DNA of 64,000 nucleotides from Hormiphora californensis (GCA_020137815.1 CM035356.1:7564001-7628000); one strand, 5' to 3'; counted from the first letter of the stretch, positions 36,301 through 39,300 are shown. The notes: a model not told the origin generated them from the sequence alone. Program-made: numbers and translations.

Positions 36301-39300
36301 GGGAGATAGAGAGATAGAGAAATATGGGGAGAGAGAGGGAGAGAGAGAGAGAGAGAGAGAGAGAGAGAGAGAGAGAGAGAGAGAGAGAGAGAAAGAGAGA
36401 GAGAGAGAGAGAGAGAGAGAGAGAGAGAGAGAGAGAGAGAGAGAGAGAGAGAGAGAGAATCAAACAAGTACCTGATGTTTAAGTTTGAGGACAAGCGCTA
36501 TTAGAAATCCACTTTCACAGTTCTGGAACAATTCCACCTGTTTTAACGTCGCTAAATGGACGTGTATTGCCATTTCTGCTTGTAGCTTATCGGGAAGATA
36601 CCTGAATAGAGATCAGTATGGTTAGAATTCGGTTACTAGGGGGATACCAAGTGGTTACCAAGTGGTTACCAAGTGGTTACCATTGTTAAACGCAGTGGGT
36701 AGCATTTGTGCTTAAAATCAGCAGAGAAATGAACTGCAGTGCGTTGCTCTCACATCATGTGTTATCAACGCACAGCACCTGTTAAAACGCATGCAGGAAA
36801 ACCCAAAACAAAGATTAGCAGGAGTAGCCAATCAAAAGCATCAAGCGGATAAAATCATACACAGATTGCAAAAACCCTATGGGAGTGTGAATGAGATTGT
36901 GGTGATCGATGTTGTAATAATAAGTTGCTAGTATAGTTAATTAAACTAGCCAATTAAAAGGTATAGATACTATACTAACCAAATACCTCCCCTGCTGTAT
37001 CTTTATAACACTGTCCCCCACGGTTAGAAGTGGACAGTGTCACAAAGCTGTCAAGGATCCCTTCCCAATTACTTCCTAATTACTTCCTAATTATTTCCCA
37101 ATTACCTCCTAATGTTATACTCACTTGAGGACCTCCTCCTCCTCAAAGGTATGTCTCTGGGCCCACAGGTAATCAAACCACCTTATTATCCTATTCTGAA
37201 GATCCTTCCCCACATTCCGGTACCCCATGTACTCCTTTAGATGATCCAATCTATCCTGGAAAGCGCTCCTATTGGCTGTGATATTGGTAATAATGTTGCC
37301 AATAGAACCCACTATTGAAGCGAATATCATGACCCCGAGTAGGAATGTAATTGTCAGGTAGATAAACTCCCAGAGTTGTGTGGGTGCCTGGACCTCTCCA
37401 ATAGTTGTCATTGTCTGGGTGGACCAGTGGAGAGAATAAGCGTACTTCATAGCCACAGAGGCATACAGAGTGGAACTATTAACACAAATTGAGTCATTGC
37501 ATATTGATTTATACTCAGCCGGATAAGCGAACTCGCTCCTCGGAGGATCCTCCACACCATTTGTTATTATCTGAGTAGTTCCATAAGTTGCCGTACTTAA
37601 GAAATAGTACACACAGGCATTCCAATGCATGACCAGTAACATAGCGAGAAACAGTACAAATATTCGCCATGTTATGGGGAAGCTAGTCCGACACTCTTTC
37701 CGGTCGTTCCAGATGAATAACCGGTGGAGTTTTACAAATTTGAGAAATCTGAGAGCAGGGGGGAAGAAGAGGGGCAGGTCTGGGTTGTGCTTCACCAACA
37801 GGAGCGCCAGCTGAGGGGAGAGTGGGAAGGATGGGATGAGAATATGTAAATATAGGTTTCAGGTTGTAACTATAAAAACTAAACTATTTTCCCCATTTAA
37901 CTAGTTAGCGCAGTAATTATAGCGTAGTCTGTGTGTATGAGAGGTTGTGAGGGGCTAAGTGAAATGCTTTACACAAACATTCATGCTTCACTAACTCATA
38001 GCAGACTTGTATTGTTGAGTAAGGGCTGAAAAGATCAACTCTAATACAACAAATTTCTGTCAGCTGGCTCACTACACACAGTGGTTAAAAGTCGGACCCC
38101 GATGTACCGGGCAGAATCCTTTTCCCAAGCATGATCCCGGTAAATCGGGGTCCGAGTGCATATAATGCTTCACACACACACACATTCCAATATCACACAC
38201 ACGCTCTCACTTTAACACATCCTCCTCCTCAAAAGTGTGGTTTTGTGCCCAAAGGTAGTCGAACCATCTAATAATCCTCCCACTGAGATCCTTCCCAACC
38301 TTTCGGTAACTCATGTACTCCTTCAAATTGTCCAGCCGGTCTTGAAATAGGTTCCGATTGGCCCGCAGGTTGGTAATAACGTTTCCGATGCTTCCAACAA
38401 CGGAGGCGAATATCATGACACCAACGAGGAAGATAGCAGTGAGATAGAAGAATTCCCAGACTTCTGTGGGCTGCTGGACCTCTCCTATAGTTGTCATGGT
38501 CTGGGTGGACCAGTAGAGAGAGTAAGCGTACTTCATAGACAGGTTAGAGAACTTGTTCACCCTTCCGTCCGGGTCTACTGTTGCGGGGTATATGAAGGTA
38601 CTTCGTGTCTCATTGTAGACCTCAGGGGAGGTATGACTGTAACTTCCACCCATCACCTCGACAGAAAGGAAGTAGTAGAGGCAGGCGTTCCAGTGCATAA
38701 CCATTAGCATGGCCATGGAGAGGACAGTGAGCCGGGCCACGATGGGAAAGTTGGAAACACACTCGGAGCGATCCACAAATTGCATCATTCGCCGGCCTTT
38801 TAGAAGTTTCAGGAGTCGGACTGCTGGTTTCGCGAACCGGGTTGAGTGGGAGAATGCGGGGAAGAAATAGACCACCTGGGATTGAGAGACACAGGGGTGG
38901 GGCGTTAGGAGTGGGATTTGGGGGCACGGGGGCGGGGCATTAGGATTGGGTTTTGGGGGCACGGGGTGTGACATTAGGGGTCACAGGCTAGGGAAATAAG
39001 GAACCGTATTATGGTAAAACGGGGCTTTAACTTGCAGCATTTAGCAGGGGGTTTGTTGAACATTCACTGACTATCTCACTTCACAAAAACGTCTACCACA
39101 TATATATATATTGTGTACTTTTTGCATATAAAATATACGGTTATAATTCTGACACAAGTACATTACCACACGATACTCGTACGGTTTGAGCGGGTCACAC
39201 AATTAATGCCTGGCATGACACACCGTACAGGAGGACACAACTTGATTGTACAGTGTACAATGTACAATAATGTACTTAATGTACAAACACACACATGATA

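What the first reader, a model, noticed from the sequence alone, without database searches (positions are those of the whole stretch)
37125..38875. CNG channel with a swappable S4/pore module: two tandem, mutually exclusive exons each encode S4-S5-pore-S6-C-linker
Seen: between a single S1-S3 region and a single CNBD lie two intact homologous exons of 665 and 686 nt. Both have a phase-0 acceptor and a phase-2 donor, so including both, or skipping both, breaks the frame. They conserve HWNAC, TIGEV and the C-linker but differ strongly in S4 ([18 protein letters not shown] vs [18 protein letters not shown]) and in the extracellular turret. Known: vertebrate CNG subunit diversity comes mainly from separate CNGA/CNGB genes. 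Inference: one gene makes two channels with different gating or permeation, or the subunits of a heterotetramer, by exchanging about 220 residues of the conduction core.
Basis: partly seen in the sequence, partly recalled or inferred. Interest (0 to 1): 0.93.

Follow-up and report, generated by a model that had tools for sequence, protein, structure and literature searches.

The report
Alternative pore-module exons, comb-jelly CNG channel
A comb-jelly cyclic-nucleotide-gated channel gene carries two old, intact, interchangeable copies of the large exon that encodes S4, the pore, S6 and the start of the C-linker, and RNA contigs show each copy spliced to the same downstream exon, so one gene most likely makes two channel subunits.

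Summary
On the minus strand, exon A (38875..38211, 665 nt) and exon B (37810..37125, 686 nt) are 61% identical in protein. Both match Pfam Ion_trans, start in phase 0 and end in phase 2, and have AG/GT splice sites. They lie between single-copy S1-S3 and C-linker/CNBD exons of one CNGA-like gene.

- **Frame:** only single inclusion keeps it. With both exons a stop comes 6 codons into B; with neither, after 4 codons.
- **RNA:** marine RNA-run contigs join the upstream exon to B (skipping A) and B to the downstream exon. One contig runs from exon A's donor into the downstream exon (21 nt, one mismatch), skipping B. A's 5' junction was not covered, and no A-B joint was seen.
- **Organism:** a ctenophore; the assembly figures fit Hormiphora californensis.
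- **Age:** the pair is old. A-type and B-type exons form separate clades across ctenophores. The 2012 Mnemiopsis GenBank model fuses a truncated A to B.
- **Annotation:** every annotated full-length isoform I retrieved (Mnemiopsis, Bolinopsis) uses B.
- **Selection:** pN 0.27 against a saturated pS of 0.78.

This is a new member of a known kind, mutually exclusive exons in ion channels. I found no paper describing it for CNG channels. Functional differences and heteromer formation are untested. The scan noted other exon pairs in this genome (BK, PKA), but not this one on other DNA.

The parts
39472..39578 (-). Constitutive upstream exon (S2-S3 loop and S3, ends ...IPTQ, donor in phase 0)
   Evidence: Sequence read, splice context. 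It matches full-length ctenophore CNG proteins. An X1 contig joins 39472 to 37810.
38877..39003 (-). About 35-nt tandem repeat (C-rich on the RNA strand) abutting the acceptor of exon A; possible splicing-control element, untested
   Evidence: Family D2 of the repeat finder; sequence.
38211..38875 (-). Exon A (665 nt, 221 codons plus 2 nt): S4, S4-S5, S5, turret, pore helix, filter TIGEVQQP, S6, C-linker A'/B' helices
   Evidence: CNGA1/CNGA3, E 1e-49. It falls in the A clade. X2 contig 6 covers 38209-38439 and runs on into the downstream exon.
38453..38542 (-). Tract of low synonymous divergence against exon B (pore helix and filter, A residues 112-141; the B counterpart is about 37367-37456): probable gene conversion between the two exons
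   Evidence: Sliding-window pS is 0.22-0.31 here against 0.8-1.0 elsewhere. Identical synonymous codons number 16/21 inside and 34/99 outside, Fisher p 6e-4, with the region chosen post hoc.
37811..38210 (-). 400-nt intron between A and B; it holds a dispersed palindromic element at 38092-38155
   Evidence: Inverted repeat I1. There are at least 40 scored copies, of 149 candidates, across the genome.
37125..37810 (-). Exon B (686 nt, 228 codons plus 2 nt): the same module, B type, with a longer Cys-rich turret and filter TIGEVQAP
   Evidence: It falls in the B clade on a long branch. X1 contigs join it to both flanking exons, and X2 and X3 contigs lie inside it.
37062..37113 (-). 11-nt tandem repeat (about 4 copies) just downstream of exon B's donor, each copy resembling a 5' splice site on the RNA strand; possible regulatory element, untested
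   Evidence: Family D4 of the repeat finder; sequence.
36472..36601 (-). Constitutive downstream exon (C-linker, begins (K)[14 protein letters not shown]...), acceptor in phase 2
   Evidence: It is joined to B by X1 contig 1 and to A by the 19-nt loose end of X2 contig 6.
35855..36305 (-). Single-copy CNBD exons downstream (36204-36305 and 35855-36073)
   Evidence: tblastn with full-length ctenophore CNG proteins; Pfam cNMP_binding.
39974..40249 (-). Single-copy S1-S2 exon upstream
   Evidence: ORF; tblastn.

Best explanation
Exons A and B are a pair of mutually exclusive exons that arose by tandem exon duplication in a ctenophore CNGA-type channel gene. The splicing machinery joins the S3 exon to either A or B, and that exon to the common C-linker exon. 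Because both exons are 2 mod 3 in length, transcripts with both or with neither hit a stop codon within a few codons. I infer that such transcripts are unproductive and removed by nonsense-mediated decay. The two mRNAs encode subunits with identical S1-S3 and CNBD. They differ at about 40% of positions from S4 through the pore and S6 to the first C-linker helices. Type-specific residues conserved across ctenophores cluster in three places: S4 and S4-S5, the start of S6, and C-linker helices A'/B'. In solved CNG channels these parts couple the ligand-binding ring to the gate. I therefore infer that the main consequence is a difference in gating efficacy or ligand sensitivity and in the outer vestibule (turret length, glycosylation, charge), not in the basic cation selectivity. 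B appears to be the commonly annotated form and A the rarer or more cell-type-restricted form. What is shown: the exon anatomy, the frame logic, three of the four junctions, and the conservation of the pair. What is inferred: NMD, strict exclusivity, and functional divergence.
For: Anatomy, phases and splice sites. Homology of 61%, both Ion_trans. Only two copies in the window and genome, and single-copy flanking exons. Frame test: single inclusion is open; both included gives a stop 6 codons into B; neither included gives a stop after 4 codons. RNA contigs: X1 contig 2 joins 39472 to 37810, skipping 1661 nt including all of A. X1 contig 1 joins 37125 to 36601. X2 contig 6 (oligo-dT metatranscriptome) matches exon A at 38209-38439 exactly, then continues with 19 nt that equal the start of the downstream exon with one synonymous mismatch. 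It also reads through the cryptic internal donor used by the old Mnemiopsis model. Exon B is covered in X2 as well. Conservation: A and B clades across ctenophore sequences. Mnemiopsis AGB13742.1 contains A then B in tandem. Another ctenophore's genomic B exon has the same phases. There are 28 type-diagnostic positions; the window's A carries the A state at 24 of 28 and never the B state, and the window's B carries 14 B states and 3 A states. Selection: pN 0.27, pS 0.78 (saturated). All three differences between the X1 contigs and the window fall at third codon positions (worked out by hand from the phases).
Against: The up->A junction (39472->38875) was not covered. The A->down junction rests on one contig with only 21 nt on the far side and one mismatch, 3 nt from the contig end. 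Every annotated or transcript-derived full-length protein I retrieved from other ctenophores carries a B-type (or unresolved, B-like) module and none an A-type one, so A may be rarely used. Logan contigs cannot show absence of A+B transcripts, nor relative levels. The window's B sits on a long branch (0.8 substitutions per site), which could mean relaxed constraint rather than a new function. No functional data exist.
Confidence: 0.8

Rival explanations
1. Only exon B makes a channel. Exon A is a conserved but essentially unproductive or regulatory exon, for example a poison cassette whose inclusion together with B triggers NMD to tune expression.
For: All annotated full-length isoforms found in Mnemiopsis and Bolinopsis, and the metatranscriptome proteins, use a B-type or B-like module. 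A plus B gives an early stop. A's 5' junction was not observed.
Against: A poison exon needs no conserved 221-codon open frame. A-type exons are more conserved across ctenophores than B-type ones, with 100% identity over the S6/C-linker half in several species. They keep every channel-critical motif. X2 contig 6 joins A directly to the downstream exon, skipping B, which is the productive configuration.
Confidence: 0.12
2. Both modules are included in one protein through a cryptic donor inside exon A, as in GenBank AGB13742.1 of Mnemiopsis. That would give a subunit with two S4-S6 modules.
For: The deposited 716-aa model has exactly this structure, with two Ion_trans stretches. The same AAG|GTTGGG site exists in the window's exon A.
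Against: X2 contig 6 reads straight through that site to the canonical donor and then into the downstream exon. X1 contig 2 skips A altogether. The 29 codons of A beyond the cryptic site are perfectly conserved across species, which would not be expected if they were intronic. The newer Mnemiopsis and Bolinopsis models hold one module. An S1-S3 plus two S4-S6 topology has no precedent that I know of.
Confidence: 0.02
3. The two exons belong to separate genes, haplotypes or an assembly duplication.
For: None found.
Against: They lie 400 nt apart on one strand, between single-copy flanking exons. Both splice to the same downstream exon. At 61% identity with saturated synonymous sites they are not alleles. 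The same A-then-B order occurs in Mnemiopsis.
Confidence: 0.01

Closest known systems
Mutually exclusive exons in voltage-gated-like ion channel genes (e.g. Nav exon 5N/5A, Cav1.2 exons 8/8a, insect para and slo, AMPA receptor flip/flop); from my own knowledge, not tested here
   Same: Tandemly duplicated homologous exons of nearly equal length and equal phase. One is chosen per transcript, so a piece of the channel core is swapped while the rest of the protein is constant.
   Different: The known cases usually swap one helix or loop (about 30-60 residues). Here one exon of about 220 residues carries S4, S4-S5, S5, the whole pore, S6 and two C-linker helices. I found no report for the CNG family.
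Vertebrate CNGA1/CNGA3 subunits (PDB 7o4h, 8ev8, 7lft)
   Same: They are the best solved-structure matches, E about 1e-49 over S4 to C-linker. They share the S4 charge pattern, the TIGE filter with its Glu, the S6 F/V gate residues, the C-linker and the CNBD.
   Different: Identity is about 45-50%. Vertebrates obtain subunit diversity from separate CNGA and CNGB genes, whereas here two variants come from one gene. Both variants are A-like in the filter.
Mnemiopsis leidyi 'cyclic nucleotide gated ion channel' AGB13742.1 (Schnitzler et al. 2012, PMC3570280) and the newer Mnemiopsis KAL52686xx and Bolinopsis XP_0636832xx isoforms
   Same: They are orthologous genes. Both the A-type and B-type modules are recognisable, in the same order.
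   Different: The 2012 model fuses a truncated A with B. The newer isoforms I retrieved all use B. None presents the pair as alternative exons.
Other duplicated-exon pairs noted by this scan in the same genome (BK/Slo, PKA-C; findings s1-870257, s1-870263)
   Same: The same genome and the same architecture of old, conserved, tandem alternative exons.
   Different: Those follow-ups saw only one copy in RNA. Here both copies are seen in RNA contigs, and the swapped module is far larger.

Membership tests
CNG channel, CNGA-type subunit | Six-TM Ion_trans core with a charged S4 | tested here: met
   Both exons match PF00520. The S1-S3 exons lie upstream. Both copies have R/K at every third S4 position.
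CNG channel, CNGA-type subunit | Pore filter T-I-G-E with the acidic Glu, which is Gly in CNGB subunits (the CNGB state is from my own knowledge) | tested here: met
   TIGEVQQP in A and TIGEVQAP in B. They align to TIGETPPP of CNGA1.
CNG channel, CNGA-type subunit | C-linker followed by a cyclic-nucleotide-binding domain | tested here: met
   C-linker alignment to CNGA1. PF00027 on the downstream exon and on full-length orthologues.
CNG channel, CNGA-type subunit | Gating by cGMP or cAMP, non-selective cation conduction | not testable with these tools
   This needs electrophysiology.
Mutually exclusive exon pair | Adjacent homologous exons with the same phases and similar length | tested here: met
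   665 and 686 nt, phase 0 to phase 2, 61% aa identity, 400-nt spacer.
Mutually exclusive exon pair | Including exactly one exon keeps the reading frame | tested here: met
   up+A+down and up+B+down are open. A+B gives a stop at codon 6 of B. Neither gives a stop after 4 codons.
Mutually exclusive exon pair | Each exon is spliced to both common flanking exons in RNA | tested here: inconclusive
   B is joined on both sides. A->down is seen in one contig with 21 nt on the far side. Up->A was not covered.
Mutually exclusive exon pair | The two exons never or rarely occur together in a mature mRNA | tested here: inconclusive
   No A-B joint appears among the contigs, but contigs cannot prove absence.
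Mutually exclusive exon pair | Both copies are kept by selection in related species | tested here: met
   A and B clades; Mnemiopsis has both; type-diagnostic residues; pN well below pS.

The most novel reading that the evidence does not exclude
Ctenophores were reported to lack a CNGB gene and to express their CNG genes in mostly non-overlapping cells (PMC9803222). They might obtain the equivalent of principal and modulatory subunits from one gene. In that case the A and B isoforms would co-assemble in the same cell into heterotetramers whose stoichiometry sets sensitivity and Ca2+ handling. That would be an independent, splicing-based solution to the problem vertebrates solved with CNGA and CNGB genes, dating back to near the base of crown ctenophores.
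Probability: 0.2. Interest if true: 0.8.

Novelty: new member of a known kind. Interest (0 to 1): 0.55.

Why it matters
It shows that an early-branching animal lineage diversifies a sensory-transduction channel by swapping the whole S4-pore-S6-C-linker core through splicing rather than by gene duplication. It corrects a published Mnemiopsis CNG model that fuses both modules. It also gives a natural pair of chimeras, with the same S1-S3 and CNBD but different cores, for asking which part of a CNG channel sets gating efficacy and vestibule properties. Finally, it bears on the published inference that ctenophore CNG channels are homotetramers (PMC9803222).

Tried and rejected
- I therefore could not fetch the orthologous genomic loci. 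These include the 1.9-Mb-contig record on which an A-type cluster (P0003) and a B-type cluster (P0012) both list the same longest contig. I could not test intron conservation or docking/selector RNA pairings.
- **Metagenome scan:** the scan returned only three ctenophore contigs, all B-type or unresolved. None gave an A-type transcript.
- **Third protein search:** the search for full-length isoforms gave only B-type models. I cannot say whether the unlisted Mnemiopsis isoforms of the same gene are A-type.
- **Inverted repeats:** a search across the three introns gave only short, weak pairs and a dispersed palindromic element. Nothing qualifies as a competing-structure switch without orthologous introns.
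- **Mosaic Tara unigene:** P0202 has the pattern B-A-B. It is probably an assembly chimera of the two isoforms, so I treat it as a hint only that A-type RNA exists in another species.
- **dN/dS:** it cannot be given as a ratio because dS is saturated.
- **Joined models:** Exons were searched one by one by reference. Joining was done only inside a local script to test the frames.
- **Other limits:** The species name is inferred from the assembly statistics only.

Full report
**Observation.**
The gene lies on the minus strand. Reading 36400-39700 and extracting splice contexts gives two exons. Exon A is 38875..38211 (665 nt) and exon B is 37810..37125 (686 nt). Each has a pyrimidine-rich tract and AG before it and GTGAG after it.

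Both start in phase 0 and end after two bases of a codon. The upstream exon (39578..39472) ends in phase 0 (...IPTQ). The downstream exon (36601..36472) begins with the third base of a Lys codon, followed by [10 protein letters not shown].

BLASTP of the two translations gives 61% identity over 215 residues, E 1e-93, and both match Pfam Ion_trans. tblastn finds just these two copies in the window and in the whole 110.7-Mb assembly. Full-length ctenophore CNG proteins laid on the window hit every other exon once, and this module twice.

**What the gene is.**
The best solved-structure matches of exon A are CNGA1 and CNGA3 (E about 1e-49), then CNGA2 and TAX-4. CNGB subunits are far behind. The alignment shows that the exon spans S4, the S4-S5 linker, S5, the turret, the pore helix, the TIGE filter, S6 and C-linker helices A'/B', up to the start of C'. 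Downstream exons encode the rest of the C-linker and a cNMP_binding domain.

The nearest named relative is the Mnemiopsis leidyi 'cyclic nucleotide gated ion channel', so the organism is a ctenophore. The assembly has 110,691,255 bases in 45 contigs with 13 large ones. That fits the Hormiphora californensis assembly described in PMC8527503. This identification is an inference from those figures.

No second close CNG gene was found in this genome. A lobate paralogue used as query hits the window's own exons best, and otherwise only weak pieces on another contig.

**Frame logic.**
In a local script, up+A+down and up+B+down are open throughout. Up+A+B+down stops 6 codons into B, and up+down stops after 4 codons. 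Only transcripts with exactly one of the two exons can encode a channel.

**RNA evidence.**
Laid on 36470-39580, they show the following.
- X1 contig 2 joins 39472 to 37810. It removes 1661 nt with GT..AG ends, including all of exon A.
- X1 contig 1 joins 37125 to 36601.
- X2 contig 6, from an oligo-dT library, matches exon A at 38209-38439 without a mismatch. It then carries 19 loose letters whose reverse complement equals the start of the downstream exon except for one third-position change. Counting the two shared GT letters, that is 21 nt of A->down junction, skipping B.
- The same contig reads through the cryptic donor used by the old Mnemiopsis model.
- X2 also holds an exon-B contig, so both exons are present in RNA of one sample.

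The 5' half of A and its junction to the S3 exon were not covered. No A-B joint was seen. Contigs cannot show absence or abundance. The three differences between X1 and the window all fall at third codon positions.

**Age and conservation.**
Searching each exon alone returned about twenty exon-sized ORFs from other assemblies. They all end ...EEDVLK followed by a stop, which is the donor read through. A maximum-likelihood tree with non-ctenophore CNG modules as outgroup gives three results.
- The ctenophore modules form one clade (100/100).
- Inside it, an A clade (99/100) holds the window's A.
- A B clade (92/85) holds the window's B on a long stem. Two further lineages are unresolved.

The 2012 GenBank protein AGB13742.1 of Mnemiopsis contains a truncated A module followed by a complete B module and scores two Ion_trans stretches. 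Mnemiopsis therefore has both exons in the same order, and the model is a prediction artefact.

A genomic contig of another ctenophore shows a B-type exon with the same acceptor and donor phases. Twenty-eight positions are fixed differently in the two clades. The window's A has the A state at 24 and never the B state. The window's B has 14 B states, 3 A states and 11 of its own. The diagnostic positions cluster in S4 and S4-S5, at the start of S6, and in C-linker helices A'/B'.

The duplication therefore predates the split of the window's lineage from the lobates. Both copies have been kept since.

**Selection and conversion.**
Between A and B, pN is 0.27 and pS is 0.78, which is saturated, so a ratio cannot be given but is well below 1. 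One stretch is different. Over the pore helix and filter (A residues 112-141) pS drops to 0.22-0.31. Identical synonymous codons number 16 of 21 there against 34 of 99 elsewhere (Fisher p 6e-4, region chosen after seeing the data).

In that stretch the window's B reads like A-type sequence ([10 protein letters not shown]). It does not carry the acidic TIGEMEQPEE shared by most B-type exons of other ctenophores. I read this as a gene-conversion tract from A to B in this lineage, with moderate confidence. It means that in this species the two isoforms differ little right at the filter. They differ mostly in S4-S5, the turret, the S6 flank and the C-linker.

**Usage in other species.**
The full-length proteins I could retrieve all carry a B-type or B-like module. 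They include nine isoforms of one Mnemiopsis gene, three RefSeq isoforms of Bolinopsis, and several metatranscriptome proteins. No A-type full-length protein turned up apart from the fused 2012 model.

One Tara unigene is a B-A-B mosaic. It is most simply an assembly chimera of the two isoforms. This is a hint, not proof, that A-type RNA exists in another species.

B therefore looks like the major form, and A a minor or cell-type-restricted one. The very high conservation of A exons argues that A is used. Several species are identical over the S6/C-linker half.

**Mechanism proposed.**
- **Shown:** two homologous exons, shared flanks, three of four junctions, frame incompatibility, and ancient conservation.
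- **Inferred, exclusivity:** the choice is made at splicing, and transcripts with both or neither exon are removed by NMD. The 400-nt spacer rules out simple steric exclusion. All sites are GT-AG, so incompatibility between spliceosome types is unlikely.
- **Inferred, function:** the functional difference lies mainly in coupling of the C-linker ring to S4-S5/S6 and in the outer vestibule. That is where the type-specific conserved residues sit.
- **Candidate control elements, untested:**
  - a C-rich 35-nt tandem repeat abutting A's acceptor;
  - an 11-nt repeat of 5'-splice-site-like units just after B's donor;
  - an 11-nt repeat before the common acceptor.
- **Open question:** whether the isoforms form separate homotetramers in different cells or heteromers in one cell.

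**Comparison with what is known.**
Mutually exclusive exons that swap parts of ion-channel cores are a classic theme (Nav, Cav, slo, AMPA receptors; from my own knowledge). Full-text searches found no report of such a pair in any CNG channel, nor in ctenophore CNG genes. The Hormiphora genome paper mentions mutually exclusive exons only as an annotation rule.

A survey of metazoan CNG genes found CNGA and CNGC, but no CNGB, in ctenophores. It inferred homotetramers from non-overlapping expression (PMC9803222). Splice variants were not considered in the passages I read.

Other notes of this scan report similar exon pairs in this genome (BK, PKA), so the mechanism seems common here. I therefore class this as a new member of a known kind. 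It is notable for the size of the swapped module (about 220 residues), its age, and the family it occurs in.

**Limits.**
- The run search and read laying were limited to one call each.
Exons were searched singly by reference, and joining was done only in a local script to test the frames.

Noticed in passing
window 38092-38155: A 20-nt-arm palindromic hairpin element lies in the intron between exons A and B. It belongs to a dispersed family of about 65 nt, with at least 40 scored copies (149 candidates) on all large contigs. Short high-depth X2 contigs at 38133-38163 probably come from other copies. It looks like a MITE.
   Followed up: partly
window 38453-38542 and 37367-37456: The pore-helix and filter stretch of the two exons shares most synonymous codons (pS about 0.25 against about 0.9 elsewhere). 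The window's B carries an A-like filter flank instead of the acidic EMEQPEE of other B-type exons. This is probably intragenic gene conversion.
   Followed up: partly
P0015 (GenBank AGB13742.1, Mnemiopsis leidyi): The published Mnemiopsis CNG protein model contains two S4-S6 modules in tandem, a truncated A joined to B through a cryptic donor. This is almost certainly a gene-prediction artefact that hid the alternative exons.
   Followed up: yes
P0202 (Tara/MERC unigene, 386 aa): A transcript-derived protein from another ctenophore is a B-A-B mosaic of the two exon types. It is likely an assembly chimera of two isoforms.
   Followed up: partly
window 36266-36470 and 39590-39665: Long (CT)n/(GA)n microsatellites sit in the introns flanking the constitutive exons on either side of the exon pair. 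They create spurious long Leu-Ser and Arg-Glu ORFs.
   Followed up: no
window 37062-37113, 36631-36674, 38877-39003: Three short tandem repeats (11, 11 and about 35 nt units) each lie within about 100 nt of a splice site of the alternative region. The one after exon B's donor repeats a 5'-splice-site-like AGGTAAT unit.
   Followed up: no
window 33802-33957 and 48249-48386: Other exons of the same gene (C-terminal coiled-coil region and N-terminal region) match full-length orthologues. I did not examine them.
   Followed up: no
P0028/P0007 and P0005 (other ctenophores): Some modules fall outside both the A and B clades and mix features: an A-like start with B-like S4 and C-linker. They may come from early-branching ctenophores, from a third exon type, or from conversion mosaics.
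   Followed up: no
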